DNA of 64,000 bases, taken from the IMG/VR virus record IMGVR_UViG_3300018080_008436, positions 310,001 to 374,000 of that record. One strand, given 5' to 3'. Below the pieces are notes generated by a model that worked only from the letters and a program-made list of their open reading frames with translations, did not search any database and was not told the origin of the DNA. This document shows positions 4,827-8,782 of this stretch, piece after piece (within the stretch, counting starts at the first letter, position 1; each line of letters begins with the position of its first letter). A program made the translations under genes and the position numbers.

Positions 4827-5016
4827 TCACCATTATACAGCCAAGATTAGTATCAAAGTAACTAAGTCCATATTCTTCCAGAACTTCTAGGACCAGTTCC
4901 CTCATTTTAAGGGAATTTCCTGTAACAACCTCAAAAGGAGGGTCATAATTAAAAATATGAGAGTCAAGTAAAGACCGAACATCTTGATGCTTAACCCCAT
5001 GTAAATCTAACTTCAT
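4804..5016 (-). CDS. stand-alone Smr-domain protein
   Basis: MKLDLHG...VVTGNS...NLG motifs; ATG at 5016 overlaps the nadD TGA. Confidence 0.7.
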   Translation of the reverse strand: MKLDLHGVKHQDVRSLLDSHIFNYDPPFEVVTGNSLKMRELVLEVLEEYGLSYFDTNLGCIMVIEEPNKR

Positions 5017-5666
5017 TTTCCGTGTAACCAACCCTTCCGATTATGAGTCTCTTTCATTTGAACCTCTTCGGAAGGGACATAAAGACAGTGGTCCTGGATA
5101 TATCGTTGAACTTCTTCGTCCAAATATGGCAAAAAGTCTGATCTGCCATGTTTTTTGAAGTGATCTCTTGCCATAGTAGACGAACATTCGGTAATTTTGT
5201 CTTCTACGTCCAAGAAAAGATGGGGAGGATTCTTATACCATCGATATTTCTTCTTCAATTCGATTCCACTTCTTGTTACAACAACAAATTTGGCAATTTC
5301 CCGTAATTTTTTGAAATTATGCCAGTTAATGAAGTTGTTTACGTTGTCAGCACCAATGATAAAACTGATATCAACATCAAGTTGTGGGTCTTTGAGGAGG
5401 GTTTGGACTAATTCGAAGGTCGAACCACTCAGTTCATGTCTAATTTCGTAATCAAATACATGAAGTTTCGGATTTTTTCTGCAAGCGATAGCGCACATCC
5501 TGAGTCTGTGTAAATTAAGCTCTAAATTCTTACCAAATCGATGTTTATTGCAAGGCAAGAGCCAAACTTCATCAAATTTTCCTTTTTCAAGGACAAATTC
5601 AGCTACTTGTATATGAGCAAGTGTTGGGGGATTGAAAGCCCCGCCAAGAATGGCAATTTTAGTCAT
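5013..5666 (-). CDS. nadD: nicotinate/nicotinamide nucleotide adenylyltransferase
   Basis: ILGGAFNPPTLAH, FIIGADN...W, VVTR, SST.AR motifs; GGAG RBS before ATG 5666. Confidence 0.9.
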   Translation of the reverse strand: MTKIAILGGAFNPPTLAHIQVAEFVLEKGKFDEVWLLPCNKHRFGKNLELNLHRLRMCAIACRKNPKLHVFDYEIRHELSGSTFELVQTLLKDPQLDVDISFIIGADNVNNFINWHNFKKLREIAKFVVVTRSGIELKKKYRWYKNPPHLFLDVEDKITECSSTMARDHFKKHGRSDFLPYLDEEVQRYIQDHCLYVPSEEVQMKETHNRKGWLHGK

Positions 5667-5684
5667 AGTTTTCTCCAATGATTT

Positions 5685-5778: not shown

Positions 5779-5915
5779 TGATGGACAAGACGGGATTCGA
5801 ACCCGCAAATCGAGATGCCTCACCCATTGCTTAGGAGAAAAATAACTCCTGCCCATGGTAGCGACATTACTCTTAAGACCAGAGCCTCAACTTTGCCAAT
5901 TTAAGTTACTTGCCC
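5779..5915 (-). ncRNA. tRNA-like RNA with G3:U70/A73 acceptor and ~60 nt structured insert in the anticodon arm
   Basis: Acceptor GGGCAAG/CUUGUCC-A, D arm ACUU/AAGU, T arm GCGGG-UUCGAAU-CCCGU; ends UCA rather than CCA. Confidence 0.7.
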
Positions 5916-5929
5916 GTCTTGTCAAATTT

Positions 5930-6051
5930 TGGCGGATGAGGTAGGATTCGAACCTACACTGTAGCGGTTTCTGTTTTTTGGTTGCTGAAGAGAACCTTTT
6001 TGTCAAGTTCATTTTTTGGACCGCCGTCTCTGCCAGTTGGACTACTCATCC
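5930..6051 (-). tRNA. tRNA with ~45 nt insertion (possible intron) in the anticodon loop; identity uncertain, possibly Leu(CAG)
   Basis: Acceptor GGAUGAG/CUCAUCC-GCCA, D arm, stem GCGGU/ACCGC enclosing a ~52 nt loop ending CAGAA, intact T arm. Confidence 0.75.
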
Positions 6052-6109: not shown

Positions 6110-6196
6110 TGGAGGAAGATTGAGGGTTCGAACCCCATCCCTTTCGGAACCATCTGTTTTCGAAACAGTGACAGGAGCCATCCTGCATAATCTTCC
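6110..6196 (-). tRNA. tRNA-Ser(CGA), non-canonical 8/4 fold
   Basis: 8-bp acceptor GGAAGAUU/AAUCUUCC, 4-bp T stem, 6-bp D stem with 4-nt loop, loop UU-CGA-AA, U73-CCA. Confidence 0.85.
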
Positions 6197-6304: not shown

Positions 6305-7042
6305 TTATACCCCAAAAATCAATAATTCAAAATCGCCATTCTCATGTTCTACGATTGCAGAGCAATGCTCTACCCAATCTCCGCAGTTATAGTAGTCAAT
6401 CCCATCAATTTTTTTGATTATAGGAGAATGAACATGACCACATATAACTCCATCGCAATGATTCTCTTTGGCATACTCTGAAAGGAGACCTTCAAACTCT
6501 CCAACATAAGTAACAGCTTTTTTAAAATTTTCCCTGGCAAACTTTGATAAACGAACTCTTTTCACTCCGAACATCCTTAAACATCTTGCCAGGAACTCAT
6601 TCATTGAAACAAGAGTGTCATAACCCCAACTTCCAACCTTTGAGATCATGACTCCAATTCTTGAAAAAAGAATGAAATCAAACTTATCTCCATGAGTGAT
6701 GTAATACTTCTTTCCAAAACTGTGATAATATGTTTCTTTACAAATTTCCAGGTTCGGATAATGAAAACTGTCCAAAAGTTCCATCATACCATGATCATGA
6801 TTTCCTAAAACATAATGGACGTTACAGTGTTTTGACATTTTTAGAAGTCTTCTAATGACTTCTGTTTGGTTTTTATCCCATTTAGTTCTGTCTAATCTCC
6901 AAAGATCAAAGATATCTCCGATAAGATATAAATTGTCACATTCAGTCTCTTTTAGGAATTTAAGTAGTTCTTTAGATTTGCATCCAACACTGGCCATGTG
7001 GCAGTCTGAGATGAATACTGCTCGGTACTTAGTTTTACTCAT
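6305..7042 (-). CDS. calcineurin-like metallophosphoesterase, UDP-2,3-diacylglucosamine hydrolase (LpxH-like) family
   Basis: ISDCH, GDIFD, GNHD, HGD, GHVH, NCGDW motifs; AGGAGG RBS before ATG 7042. Confidence 0.85.
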   Translation of the reverse strand: MSKTKYRAVFISDCHMASVGCKSKELLKFLKETECDNLYLIGDIFDLWRLDRTKWDKNQTEVIRRLLKMSKHCNVHYVLGNHDHGMMELLDSFHYPNLEICKETYYHSFGKKYYITHGDKFDFILFSRIGVMISKVGSWGYDTLVSMNEFLARCLRMFGVKRVRLSKFARENFKKAVTYVGEFEGLLSEYAKENHCDGVICGHVHSPIIKKIDGIDYYNCGDWVEHCSAIVEHENGDFELLIFGV

Positions 7043-7130
7043 ATTTTTCCTCCTATAAGTAGTAAGGAATAATACTGAGAAAACAGGATAAAACCTACTC
7101 AATAATGAGTTGTTAACCAAGTATTAATAT

Positions 7131-7221
7131 TGGCAGAGGGAGTGGGACTCGAACCCACAAACCGCATTTCTACAGCTTACATGATTTCAAATCAAGCTCT
7201 TCATCCAGCCAGATTCCCTCC
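7131..7221 (-). tRNA. tRNA-Ser(UGA) with degenerate D arm
   Basis: Acceptor GGAGGGA/UCCCUCU-GCCA, loop UU-UGA-AA, long variable arm. Confidence 0.8.
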
Positions 7222-7227
7222 ATTGAT

Positions 7228-7313
7228 TGGTAGCTAGGAGGGGGGTCGAACCCCTACGCCTTTCGGCATTAGTTTCTAAGACTAACATGTCTACCAAGTT
7301 CCATCACCTAGCC
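7228..7313 (-). tRNA. tRNA-Leu(UAG)
   Basis: Loop CU-UAG-AA, variable arm GCC-GAAA-GGC, ACCA end. Confidence 0.95.
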
Positions 7314-7318
7314 ATCTT

Positions 7319-7395
7319 TGGTAGCCTCGCTGGGAGTCGAACCCAGAACATACAGTTTCTAAGACTGCCCTCTCTGCCAATTGGAGTACGAGACC
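7319..7395 (-). tRNA. tRNA-Leu(UAG), short variable loop
   Basis: 77 nt cloverleaf, loop CU-UAG-AA, ACCA end. Confidence 0.9.
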
Positions 7396-7491: not shown

Positions 7492-7578
7492 TGGTAGCCA
7501 GGGAGGGCCTCGAACCCTCACTCCCTTTCGGGAACTGGATTTTGAATCCAGCGCGTCTGCCAATTTCACCACCTGGCC
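7492..7578 (-). tRNA. tRNA-Leu(CAA)
   Basis: Loop UU-CAA-AA, long variable arm, ACCA. Confidence 0.95.
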
Positions 7579-7589
7579 AATAAATTTAA

Positions 7590-7657
7590 TGGAGCTAATG
7601 AGATTCGAACTCATCCCCCTGCCTCTATGGGCAGTTCGGCTACCGTCTAGTAACCCC
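7590..7657 (-). ncRNA. 68-nt tRNA-like RNA with G3:U70/A73 acceptor and 6-nt anticodon-position loop
   Basis: GGGGUUA/UAGCUCC-A acceptor, CUGCC-CAUAGA-GGCAG, AUGAG-UUCGAAU-CUCAU; no CCA. Confidence 0.65.
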
Positions 7658-7689: not shown

Positions 7690-7777
7690 TGGTAGTCTCG
7701 GGGAGATTCGAACTCCCACCTCCTTCGCGGAGACAACGACCTCAACGTTGCGTGTCTGCCAGTTCCACCACGAGACC
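7690..7777 (-). tRNA. tRNA-Leu(GAG)
   Basis: Loop UU-GAG-GU, long variable arm, ACCA. Confidence 0.95.
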
Positions 7778-7847: not shown

Positions 7848-7923
7848 TGGTAGCCCTGGTCGGATTCGAACCGACACTTTACGGATTTTAAGTCCGCTCC
7901 CTCTGCCGTTGGAGTACAGGGCC
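7848..7923 (-). tRNA. tRNA-Leu(UAA), short variable loop
   Basis: 76 nt, loop CU-UAA-AA, ACCA. Confidence 0.9.
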
Positions 7924-7928
7924 ATTTT

Positions 7929-7990
7929 TAACTGTTTTTCTCGTTATAGTGGAAAATATAACTGTTTTTCCAGTTTTGTAACTGTTTTTC
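7929..7990. repeat. three 12-bp direct repeats
   Basis: TAACTGTTTTTC at 7929, 7959, 7979. Confidence 0.85.
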
Positions 7991-7998
7991 CAGTAAAA

Positions 7999-8586: not shown

Positions 8587-8619
8587 AAAAAAACCCCGTT
8601 CGGAAAACCGAACGGGGTT
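8587..8619 (-). terminator. attenuator terminator upstream of the tRNA array
   Basis: 12-bp stem AACCCCGTTCGG-TTTT-CCGAACGGGGTT followed by T run. Confidence 0.9.
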
Positions 8620-8637
8620 GAAAACCGAGTTAAGAAC

Positions 8638-8715
8638 TTACGTTCTCTGGACGCACAACCCCGTCCATCTCAAACTGAGATATGATGAACATAGGCTGAG
8701 CGATAAAGATTTCAT
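8638..8715 (-). CDS. leader peptide MKSLSLSLCSSYLSLRWTGLCVQRT (putative attenuator)
   Basis: ATG 8715, TAA 8640-8638, AGGA RBS; codons 3-15 only Ser/Leu/Cys/Tyr; contains antiterminator strand GGACGGGGTTG. Confidence 0.85.
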   Translation of the reverse strand: MKSLSLSLCSSYLSLRWTGLCVQRT

Positions 8716-8754
8716 TATAAGTTCTTTCCTGTTAAAAATTCAAATTACAACCCT

Positions 8755-8782
8755 ATTATAAACTGGATCTGAAGCTTTTCAA
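8755..8782 (-). promoter_or_regulatory. sigma70-type promoter for the leader and tRNA array
   Basis: TTGAAA-N16-TATAAT. Confidence 0.75.

What the first reader, a model, noticed from the sequence alone, without database searches (positions are those of the whole stretch)
5779..5925. 137-nt tRNA-like RNA with alanine identity, large structured insert and an alternative pairing switch
Seen: acceptor, D and T arms are intact with G3:U70 and A73. The anticodon arm is replaced by ~60 extra nt forming hairpins (CUCU/AGAG; AUGUC/GGCAU; CCAU/AUGG; AGGAG/CUCCU). The segment GACAAGACGGG overlapping the 5' end is an exact 11-nt complement of CCCGUCUUGUC (3' strands of the T stem and acceptor), so two exclusive folds exist. 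Established: G3:U70 + A73 specify AlaRS charging, as in tmRNA. Inference: a mini-tmRNA-like RNA, intron-containing tRNA or decoy whose maturation is conformationally gated.
Basis: partly seen in the sequence, partly recalled or inferred. Interest (0 to 1): 0.65.

Follow-up and report, generated by a model that had tools for sequence, protein, structure and literature searches.

The report
Alanine-type tRNA-like gene, huge phage
A huge phage's tRNA gene cluster holds a 134-base tRNA look-alike that keeps the tRNA body and the marks that alanine-charging enzymes read, but carries 71 extra bases where the anticodon should be, so it cannot read codons; it is either a working non-decoding RNA or a recently broken tRNA gene.

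Summary
Window 5782-5915 (minus strand) is a tRNA-shaped gene (Rfam tRNA 34.6 bits, cut-off 29). It has intact acceptor, D and T arms, G3:U70 and A73, and 71 nt in place of anticodon-arm positions 30-40. An exact 11-nt pairing links the 5' leader to the 3' strand.

It lies in a Ser/Leu/Tyr/Cys tRNA array of a roughly 0.5-Mb phage, next to a second over-long tRNA-like gene (E2).

- **tmRNA:** not detected by ARAGORN or Rfam, and the D arm is full.
- **Spliceable tRNA:** not clearly. Only one strained excision gives a canonical anticodon arm.
- **Repeat or mimic:** the insert is single-copy and matched nothing outside this phage.
- **Orthologues:** none at the matching position in seven related phage contigs, so conservation of the insert could not be tested.
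- **3' end:** it lacks the encoded CCA that 14 of 16 array members have.

Two or three other tRNA-likes in this clade also combine G3:U70, A73 and no CCA. One pair of orthologues keeps G3:U70 while neighbouring pairs covary. This suggests a small class of alanine-type, non-decoding tRNA-likes.

Best reading (about 0.4): E1 belongs to that class. Main rival (about 0.35): a young pseudogene. Interest is moderate.

The parts
5782..5915 (-). E1: 134-nt tRNA-like gene, from G1 at 5915 to discriminator A73 at 5782
   Evidence: Rfam RF00005 34.6 bits, above the gathering score of 29, full-length model match. ARAGORN with introns allowed reports the same ends.
5909..5915 (-). Acceptor 5' strand GGGCAAG (G3 at 5913)
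   Evidence: Direct reading; pair table.
5783..5789 (-). Acceptor 3' strand CUUGUCC (U70 at 5785), followed by A73 at 5782
   Evidence: Direct reading. Pair string --o---- shows G3.U70 as the only wobble in the stem.
5890..5906 (-). D arm ACUU-AAAUUGGCA-AAGU
   Evidence: Rfam alignment. Pairs checked by script (corrected).
5790..5806 (-). T arm GCGGG-UUCGAAU-CCCGU (G49.U65 wobble)
5815..5885 (-). 71-nt insert replacing anticodon-arm positions 30-40. It holds hairpin GCUCU-GGUCUUA-AGAGU (5869-5885) and a long arm AUGUC..CCAU..GCAGGAG-UUAUUUUU-CUCCU..AUGG..GGCAU (5815-5867). GAG (5886-5888) and CUC (5812-5814) close the junction.
   Evidence: Minimum-energy folds. Insert alone z = -1.7. No 7-nt loop with U33. 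Single-copy and matched only in this phage.
5916..5923 (-). 5' leader GACAAGAC. Together with G1-G3 it is an exact 11-nt complement of 5784-5794 (3' strands of the T stem and acceptor).
   Evidence: the repeat finder pair I11. The precursor's minimum-energy fold uses it. It overlaps a promoter-like -35 TTGACA.
5779..5781 (-). UCA where the other array members encode CCA
   Evidence: Table of 3' trailers.
5933..6051 (-). E2: neighbouring over-long tRNA-like gene (G73-CCA) with a 52-nt anticodon loop that holds a conserved 43-nt module (5978-6020). It gives context for E1.
   Evidence: Rfam tRNA 36.8 bits. Orthologues at L013:7752-7870, L142:1635-1756 and L232:7119-7242. The module hairpin covaries.
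7587..7657 (-). E3: second Ala-type tRNA-like in the same array. Acceptor GGGGUUA/UAGCUCC with G3.U70, A73 followed by UUA, and loop CAUAGAG without U33.
   Evidence: The orthologue L015:6820-6928 keeps G3.U70 and A73-UCA, with compensatory changes at pairs 5 and 6.

Best explanation
E1 is a tRNA-derived gene that no longer decodes. It keeps a complete tRNA core (acceptor, D and T arms and the tertiary-contact bases), so it should be transcribed with the array and cut out by the normal tRNA-processing enzymes as a stable RNA.

Its acceptor stem carries the alanine identity set (G3:U70, A73, G2:C71). Because UCA is encoded in place of CCA, its 3' end would have to be trimmed to A73 and given CCA by the CCA-adding enzyme. 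After that, AlaRS could charge it whatever the anticodon region looks like.

The 71-nt branched insert replaces the anticodon loop, so the RNA cannot read a codon.

I take it to be one member of a small class of alanine-type, CCA-less, non-decoding tRNA-like RNAs that this phage clade keeps in its class-II tRNA arrays. It would act as a tRNA-shaped decoy or sink, or as a ribosome-independent alanyl carrier.

Shown: the anatomy, the identity marks and the context. Inferred: expression, processing, charging and the role.
For: 1. **Intact tRNA core.** Rfam tRNA match above the gathering score, and all stems paired. By direct reading the core bases U8, A14, G18 G19, A21 and the T loop UUCGAAU are all present.
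2. **Placement.** It sits 14 nt after E2 and 9 nt before tRNA-Ser(UGA), on the same strand.
3. **G3:U70 with A73 and no CCA recurs in non-canonical tRNA-likes of the clade.**
   - E3, window 7587-7657.
   - Its orthologue L015:6820-6928. There G3.U70 is kept while pairs 5 and 6 change compensatorily, and the trailer is A-UCA as in E1.
   - L234:8937-9038.
   - No canonical tRNA in these loci has G3:U70.
4. **The lineage maintains insert-bearing tRNA-likes under selection.** E2 has orthologues in at least three related phages, with compensatory changes in the acceptor, T, anticodon-stem and insert helices.
5. **L234:8937-9038 may be a relative.** It shares G49.U65, a D loop starting AAAU-GG, and AAUGGG...GGC at exactly the same distance (22 nt) from the T stem.
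Against: - No orthologue at the matching position in seven related phage contigs. Every E1 copy found is identical, so there is no covariation for the insert or the leader pairing.
- The insert folds no better than chance.
- UCA, U70 and U65 are each one C-to-U change away from CCA, G3:C70 and G49:C65. That pattern is what early decay would look like.
- A 6-nt direct repeat (UGAGGC) brackets 67 nt of the insert, and acceptor-like 7-mers recur (GACAAGA, GGGCAAG, GGGCAGG). Both hint at a recent insertion or duplication.
- A model built from E1 does not rank L234:8937-9038 above ordinary tRNAs (27.4 bits).
- No expression data.
Confidence: 0.4

Rival explanations
1. E1 is a young pseudogene. A class-I tRNA paralogue of the array was disabled by an insertion or duplication in its anticodon arm. 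It is now starting to decay and has no function. G3:U70 is an accidental C-to-U change.
For: - Orphan status: no counterpart in related arrays.
- The encoded CCA is lost (UCA), unlike 14 of 16 neighbours.
- Two G.U wobbles and the UCA are all single C-to-U changes.
- UGAGGC direct repeats flank 67 nt, and acceptor-like 7-mers are repeated.
- Insert stability is within the range of shuffled sequence.
- No canonical anticodon loop.
- Over-long 'pseudo tRNAs' are already known in megaphage genomes (PMC6784885).
Against: - All three tRNA arms and the tertiary-contact bases are still perfect.
- The same G3:U70, A73 and no-CCA combination recurs in other tRNA-likes of the clade, and one orthologous pair conserves it.
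- The neighbouring insert-bearing gene E2 is clearly under selection.
Confidence: 0.35
2. E1 is an interrupted tRNA gene. Its insert is removed at the RNA level as an unusual short intron, like the 'enigmatic introns' of Lak megaphage tRNAs, to give a decoding tRNA.
For: - ARAGORN with introns allowed proposes Gln(CUG).
- One excision restores a 5-bp stem with loop CUCUGGU.
- Relatives carry inserts whose removal restores canonical arms: L015:6252 gives loop CUUAAAA, L015:8664 gives CUUGAAA, L130 gives AUUUCAA.
- There is precedent in megaphages (PMC6784885).
Against: - The only solution uses nucleotide 26 as part of the stem, leaves a 4-nt variable loop and pairs a Gln anticodon with an Ala-type acceptor.
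- No group I intron or other ribozyme family was found by Rfam at E up to 10.
- I saw no bulge-helix-bulge motif when reading the fold by eye.
- No RNA ligase or splicing endonuclease was found among the 20 window proteins scanned. Most of the genome was not examined.
Confidence: 0.07
3. E1 is a miniature tmRNA-like RNA. It would be charged with alanine, enter stalled ribosomes and offer a short reading frame from its insert.
For: - G3:U70 and A73, as in the tRNA-like domain of tmRNA.
- The insert holds GCA GGA GUU AUU UUU CUC CUA AGC AAU GGG UGA (window 5820-5852, read directly). This is a 10-codon frame that starts with an alanine codon and ends with a stop.
- E3 in the same array has a tmRNA/tRNA-Ala-type acceptor (GGGGUUA/UAGCUCC) and a weak tmRNA match (10-18.5 bits).
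Against: - ARAGORN's tmRNA search is negative.
- Rfam tmRNA models score 12.8 bits at most on E1, against a cut-off of 47, and match the T arm only.
- E1 has a complete D arm, which tmRNAs lack.
- No pseudoknots were seen and no CCA is encoded.
- The frame is buried in a hairpin, and the tag does not end in the usual hydrophobic/Ala-Ala motif.
Confidence: 0.05

Closest known systems
tRNA-Ala and AlaRS minihelix substrates
   Same: G1:C72, G2:C71, G3:U70 and A73 on a 7-bp acceptor stacked on a normal T arm. By established knowledge, AlaRS recognises these without reading the anticodon.
   Different: No anticodon arm, and 61 nt longer than a 73-nt tRNA body. CCA is not encoded. The fourth pair is C4:G69 rather than G4:C69. 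Charging was not tested.
tmRNA (Rfam RF00023 and permuted forms)
   Same: An alanine-type acceptor and T arm joined to a large non-tRNA insert, which carries a short frame that starts with GCA.
   Different: E1 has a full D arm. No pseudoknots were seen, no long P2 helix, no CCA and no tmRNA model hit. It is also far shorter.
Over-long 'pseudo tRNAs' with 'enigmatic introns' in Lak megaphages (Devoto et al. 2019, PMC6784885)
   Same: tRNA genes of a roughly 0.5-Mb phage that exceed normal length because of an insert in the anticodon region. The removal mechanism is unknown and the inserts are identical across samples.
   Different: The Lak inserts are 90-115 nt, sit after position 37 of tRNAs with recognisable anticodons, and one may itself be a tRNA. 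I saw no resemblance in the intron sequences shown. E1 has no recognisable anticodon.
Phage T4 stable RNAs 'species 1 and 2' (rnaC, rnaD) in the T4 tRNA cluster. Recalled from memory and not checked here.
   Same: Small stable RNAs of about 120-140 nt and unknown function, encoded among phage tRNA genes and processed with them.
   Different: No sequence comparison was made. Alanine identity is not a known feature of them.
Module-bearing tRNA-likes of this and other phages
   Same: A tRNA body with extra structured RNA in the anticodon arm. E1's first hairpin (..CU-G.....A-AG..) aligns with the module hairpin of L227:4864-4978, which is the best non-self hit of the E1 model (40 bits).
   Different: E1 lacks the A-rich 5' flank and the UyUwCAGCAA tail. 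The module model does not hit E1 at E up to 10.
YrlA / bacterial Y RNA-like tRNA mimics (RF02553)
   Same: Non-coding RNAs that contain a tRNA-like module.
   Different: The only match scores 19 bits against a cut-off of 69. It spans the T arm of E2 and the D arm of E1, so it is an artefact of two adjacent tRNA genes.

Membership tests
tRNA (Rfam RF00005) | Cloverleaf core: 7-bp acceptor, D arm with G18 G19, T arm with UUCRANY loop | tested here: met
   34.6 bits against a gathering score of 29, full-length model. All pairs are standard or G.U.
tRNA (decoding) | 5-bp anticodon stem with a 7-nt loop, U33 and purine 37 | tested here: not met
   71 nt replace positions 30-40. The hairpin loops are GGUCUUA and UUAUUUUU. 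Only one strained excision yields a canonical arm.
tRNA (decoding) | 3' CCA, encoded or added | tested here: inconclusive
   The genome encodes A73-UCA, while 14 of 16 neighbours encode CCA. Post-transcriptional addition cannot be tested here.
tRNA-Ala identity | G3:U70 wobble pair | tested here: met
   G at 5913 pairs with U at 5785.
tRNA-Ala identity | A73 discriminator and G2:C71 | tested here: met
   Direct reading.
tRNA-Ala identity | Aminoacylation by AlaRS | not testable with these tools
   Needs a charging assay.
tmRNA | Detected by tmRNA models (ARAGORN; Rfam RF00023 and RF04321) | tested here: not met
   No ARAGORN tmRNA. Best Rfam match is 12.8 bits on the T arm only, against a cut-off of 47.
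tmRNA | tRNA-like domain without a D stem, joined to the rest by a long helix, with pseudoknots | tested here: not met
   A 4-bp D stem with a 9-nt loop is present, and the folds show no pseudoknot-forming complementarity.
tmRNA | Tag reading frame with a resume codon and an in-frame stop | tested here: inconclusive
   A GCA...UGA frame of 10 codons exists (5820-5852). It lies inside a hairpin and the tag is atypical (direct reading).
tmRNA | SmpB partner | not tested
   Only 20 of the window's proteins were scanned. The rest of the roughly 0.5-Mb genome was not available.
Group I intron in a tRNA gene | Intron of 200 nt or more with the P1-P9 core, inserted in the anticodon loop | tested here: not met
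   The insert is 71 nt and no Rfam intron family matches at E up to 10.
Archaeal/eukaryal-type tRNA intron | Bulge-helix-bulge at the exon-intron borders, with excision restoring a canonical arm | tested here: not met
   No such motif was seen when reading the folds by eye. The excision scan gives one strained solution.
   No R1 hit on 5782-5915 at E up to 10.

The most novel reading that the evidence does not exclude
E1, E3 (window 7587-7657), L015:6820-6928 and L234:8937-9038 would form a previously undescribed class of phage RNAs. They would be AlaRS-chargeable tRNA-like molecules whose anticodon arm is replaced by variable structured RNA and whose CCA is not encoded. Huge phages would use them for something other than decoding. 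Possible roles are a decoy for host tRNA-directed defence or toxin enzymes, an alanyl donor outside the ribosome, or a stripped-down trans-translation device.
Probability: 0.2. Interest if true: 0.8.

Novelty: new variant of a known kind. Interest (0 to 1): 0.45.

Why it matters
Phage tRNA arrays are usually read as codon-usage helpers or as replacements for host tRNAs destroyed by defence nucleases. This array mixes ordinary tRNAs with several tRNA-shaped genes that cannot decode, and some of those carry alanine identity marks.

If these RNAs are made and charged, phages use the tRNA fold as a chassis for other RNA functions. AlaRS, which ignores the anticodon, would be the natural enzyme to exploit. 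That idea can be tested directly with standard RNA sequencing and charging assays.

If E1 is only a broken gene, it still records how quickly these arrays gain and lose members.

Tried and rejected
- **Known RNA families.** Rfam at gathering and permissive thresholds gave only tRNA. The YrlA match (19 bits) is an artefact of two adjacent tRNA genes. tmRNA_permuted (12.8 bits) matches the T arm only.
- **Homologues of E1.**
  - Exact or degenerate DNA patterns from the 3' half, the long hairpin, and the AAUGGG..GGC-plus-T-arm stretch found only the same phage in IMG/VR. They found nothing in 185,579 species genomes.
  - blastn against 50,697 phage records gave only T-arm matches.
  - blastn against all fetched loci gave nothing for the insert.
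- **Synteny walks.** I used NMNAT and the 199-aa array-adjacent protein. Related arrays were found, but none holds E1 at the matching place.
- **Other anchor proteins.** The Metallophos and DnaJ searches returned unrelated phages with no useful arrays.
- **Is E1's insert an E2-type module?** No. Model R1 gives no hit.
- **Is L234:8937-9038 an orthologue?** This remains a lead only. The MAFFT alignment is uninformative, and the E1 model scores it 27.4 bits, no better than ordinary tRNAs.
- **CRISPR-repeat or other host-sequence mimicry.** Not supported for either insert. The E1 pattern had 0 genome hits. The E2 pattern had 3 hits, all inside protein-coding sequence.
- **Promoter reading of the leader (TTGACA-16-TAAATT).** Such sites are no more frequent than in shuffles.
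- **Literature.** Five searches found no description of this RNA. The only related report is the Lak megaphage tRNA introns.

Full report
**Where it is**

The window is part of a huge phage genome. It is identical to IMG/VR contig 3300018080_008436 (476 kb) and to JGI contig Ga0180433_10000003 (525 kb). The same sequence occurs in at least three other samples.

All genes in this part run on the minus strand. Between ClpB/DnaJ genes (13931-10564) and an NMNAT-like gene (5678-5013) lies a tRNA array at 8458-3991. ARAGORN reads it as Ser x5, Leu x5, Tyr x2 and Cys x2, so nearly all are class-II tRNAs. A calcineurin-like phosphoesterase gene (7120-6305) sits inside the array. The finding lies in the array, between an over-long tRNA-like gene (E2, 6051-5933) and tRNA-Ser(UGA) (5772-5685).

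**Checking the observation**

On the minus strand, 5915-5782 reads as follows:
- Acceptor GGGCAAG, then UA.
- D arm ACUU-AAAUUGGCA-AAGU, then U.
- GAG, then 71 nt, then CUC.
- Variable loop GAUUU.
- T arm GCGGG-UUCGAAU-CCCGU.
- Acceptor 3' strand CUUGUCC, then A.

Rfam's tRNA model scores it above the curated cut-off (34.6 against 29), with the insert placed inside the anticodon arm.

The 11-nt complement between the leader plus G1-G3 and the 3' strands of the T stem and acceptor is exact. It wins in the fold of the 147-nt precursor (-51.5 kcal/mol, z = -3.9). The mature 134-nt sequence folds as a tRNA-like shape (-43.9 kcal/mol, z = -2.6).

Three qualifications apply:
1. After A73 the genome reads UCA, not CCA, although 14 of the 16 array members encode CCA.
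2. The insert on its own is not more stable than shuffled sequence (z = -1.7), and its base has alternative pairings.
3. Exact 11-nt inverted repeats within 160 nt occur four times in this window, where I estimate about 2.4 by chance. The same leader also forms a promoter-like -35 box, and such sites are no commoner here than in shuffles.

The pairing is real. That it acts as a switch is not shown.

**What it is not**

- **tmRNA.** ARAGORN, which looks for tmRNA, finds none. Rfam's tmRNA models match only the T arm, at 12.8 bits against 47. E1 has the full D arm that tmRNAs lack.
- **Group I intron.** The insert is too small, and no intron or ribozyme family matches.
- **Simple spliceable tRNA.** I enumerated every single excision that would leave a 17-nt anticodon arm with five pairs, U33 and a purine at 37. 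One solution exists (UGAGG-CUCUGGU-CCUCG, Gln CUG). It has to use nucleotide 26 as part of the stem, and it contradicts the alanine-type acceptor. ARAGORN's 'Gln with 42-nt intron' is no better founded.
- **Repeated or borrowed sequence.** A pattern from the long hairpin occurs once in the 476-kb contig and nowhere else in IMG/VR. It is absent from one genome each of 185,579 bacterial and archaeal species.

**Relatives**

No phage closer than 59% NMNAT identity exists in the protein collection. I fetched syntenic ClpB-DnaJ-array-NMNAT regions from seven more distant relatives (L013, L015, L019, L142, L227/L246, L232/L242, L234 and L247).

None has E1 at the matching place, and blastn finds nothing like its insert. 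E1 is an orphan at present sampling.

**The context changes the picture**

These arrays are full of aberrant tRNA-like genes.

- **E2 and its orthologues** (L013:7752, L142:1635, L232:7119) keep a tRNA body and a long insert across phages whose proteins are only about 50-60% identical. They show compensatory changes in every helix. Their insert contains a 43-nt module: an A-rich flank, a 6-bp hairpin, then UyUwCAGCAA.
- **The same module turns up in other tRNA-like genes.** It occurs in another family of the clade (acceptor GGAGAGG) and in unrelated viral contigs (L130, L074, L079, L045, L038). The hairpin covaries (97.7% paired, three pairs with double changes, 0 of 500 shuffles as good).
- **Conclusion from this.** Insert-bearing tRNA-likes are maintained by selection in this lineage. 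E1 itself does not contain that module (no hit at E up to 10). Its first hairpin does align with the module hairpin in the best non-self hit of an E1-based model (L227, 40 bits).

**The alanine marks**

I ran a census of every T-arm plus acceptor combination in the clade loci. G3:U70 occurs in none of about 60 canonical tRNAs. It does occur in four non-canonical elements that also have A73 and lack CCA:
- E1.
- E3 (window 7587-7657), with acceptor GGGGUUA/UAGCUCC. This is almost the classical tRNA-Ala/tmRNA stem.
- L015:6820-6928, the orthologue of E3, with acceptor GGGGCCA/UGGCUCC. Its trailer is A-UCA, as in E1.
- L234:8937-9038.

Between E3 and its orthologue, pairs 5 and 6 have changed on both sides while the G3.U70 wobble has stayed. 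That is what selection for the wobble predicts. The middle of that RNA differs completely in length between the two phages (71 against 109 nt).

L234:8937-9038 shares further oddities with E1: G49.U65, the D loop AAAU-GG, and AAUGGG...GGC exactly 22 nt before the T stem. The E1 covariance model does not rank it above ordinary tRNAs, so I treat it only as a lead.

**Weighing the explanations**

For a functional, non-decoding alanine-type tRNA-like RNA:
- The tRNA core is perfect.
- The alanine set recurs, and in one case is conserved.
- The lineage demonstrably keeps insert-bearing tRNA-likes.

For a young pseudogene:
- E1 is an orphan.
- The encoded CCA is lost.
- U70, U65 and U74 are each one C-to-U step from the canonical state.
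- The insert is bracketed by a 6-nt direct repeat and is not convincingly structured.

I put these at about 0.40 and 0.35. The spliced-tRNA and mini-tmRNA readings are at about 0.07 and 0.05.

The proposed mechanism rests on established knowledge, not on tests made here:
- The tRNA fold directs RNase P cleavage and 3' processing.
- A non-CCA trailer allows endonucleolytic 3' cleavage, followed by CCA addition.
- AlaRS charges any acceptor helix that carries G3:U70.

**Comparison with what is known**

The nearest published case is the set of over-long 'pseudo tRNAs' with 'enigmatic introns' in Lak megaphages (PMC6784885). The phenomenon is the same. The sequences are unrelated, and there the anticodons are recognisable. 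From memory, phage T4's stable RNAs species 1 and 2 are another precedent for unexplained small RNAs inside a phage tRNA cluster. E1 is best filed as a new variant of tRNA-derived, tRNA-like phage RNA, not as a member of the tmRNA or intron families.

Noticed in passing
window 5933-6051 (-), module at 5978-6020. Also L013:7784-7826, L142:1666-1709, L232:7153-7196 and 7572-7614, L015:8689-8731 and 7951-7992, L227:4889-4931, L234:10288-10329, L130:3500-3540 (-), L074:589-629, L038:2324-2365: A conserved 43-nt RNA module (A-rich flank, 6-bp covarying hairpin, then UyUwCAGCAA) sits inside the anticodon arm of tRNA-like genes in this clade and in unrelated viral contigs. It lies either in the loop or splits the 5' strand of the anticodon stem near positions 28/29. 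In the second case a 7-nt U33/A37 loop follows, whose 'anticodon' differs between orthologues (UGA, AUU, UUC, AUG). It has no Rfam family, and a pattern scan of 185,579 genomes gave only chance hits in coding sequence. It could be a new short tRNA intron or a new functional RNA module, and it may be more interesting than E1 itself.
   Followed up: partly
window 7587-7657 (-); L015:6820-6928: A second alanine-type tRNA-like (E3). Its acceptor is GGGGUUA/UAGCUCC with G3.U70, and A73 is followed by UUA. It has a reduced D region (CUAGACGG), loop CAUAGAG without U33, and a weak tmRNA-model match (10-18.5 bits). The L015 orthologue keeps G3.U70 and A73 but has a 38-nt longer, unrelated middle.
   Followed up: partly
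L015:8664-8780 compared with L018:370-518: The same tRNA-like gene in two near-identical phages differs by a 32-nt piece that carries a UUCG hairpin and is flanked by the direct repeat GAACTTG. A similar doubled hairpin occurs in L015:7886-8036. The module therefore gains or loses pieces at the DNA level.
   Followed up: no
L015:6252-6366 compared with window 7851-7923 (-): The L015 gene looks like the window's short tRNA-Leu(UAA) but has a 39-nt imperfect hairpin in the anticodon loop. Removing it would restore the loop CUUAAAA. ARAGORN finds no other Leu(UAA) in the part of L015 that was fetched.
   Followed up: no
window 6110-6196 (-) and 7134-7222 (-); L232:6985-7070: tRNAs with serine anticodons (CGA, UGA) score 34-38 bits on the selenocysteine-tRNA model. 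They have an 8-bp acceptor and a 6-bp D stem, a shape like tRNA-Sec or the 'allo-tRNAs'. ARAGORN missed 7134-7222.
   Followed up: no
window 7231-7313, 7322-7395, 7495-7578, 7693-7777, 7851-7923 (all -): All five Leu tRNAs start with a G1.U72 wobble, as do their counterparts in related phages. Two of them (73-74 nt) lack the long variable arm that bacterial tRNA-Leu normally has.
   Followed up: no
window 8592-8782 (-): Two promoter-like sites (8782-8755 and 8743-8714) are followed by a strong 12-bp terminator hairpin with a U tract (8619-8592), just upstream of the array. This could be a small RNA or a leader. A similar terminator sequence precedes the array in L019.
   Followed up: no
window 6305-7120 (-) and 5013-5678 (-): A calcineurin-like phosphoesterase gene and an NMNAT-like nucleotidyltransferase gene are embedded in the tRNA array. 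Relatives carry thioredoxin, a second Metallophos gene and an Apyc1-like metallo-beta-lactamase nearby. These may relate to RNA-end repair or counter-defence.
   Followed up: no
L142:137-254; L232:7696-7840 (= L242:13137-13281); L246:5928-6080: Further 118-153-nt tRNA-like elements with A/U-rich acceptor helices of 7-11 bp (for example AGAUUAGAAAA/UUUUCUAAUC), no CCA and, in L142, two internal T-arm-like hairpins.
   Followed up: no
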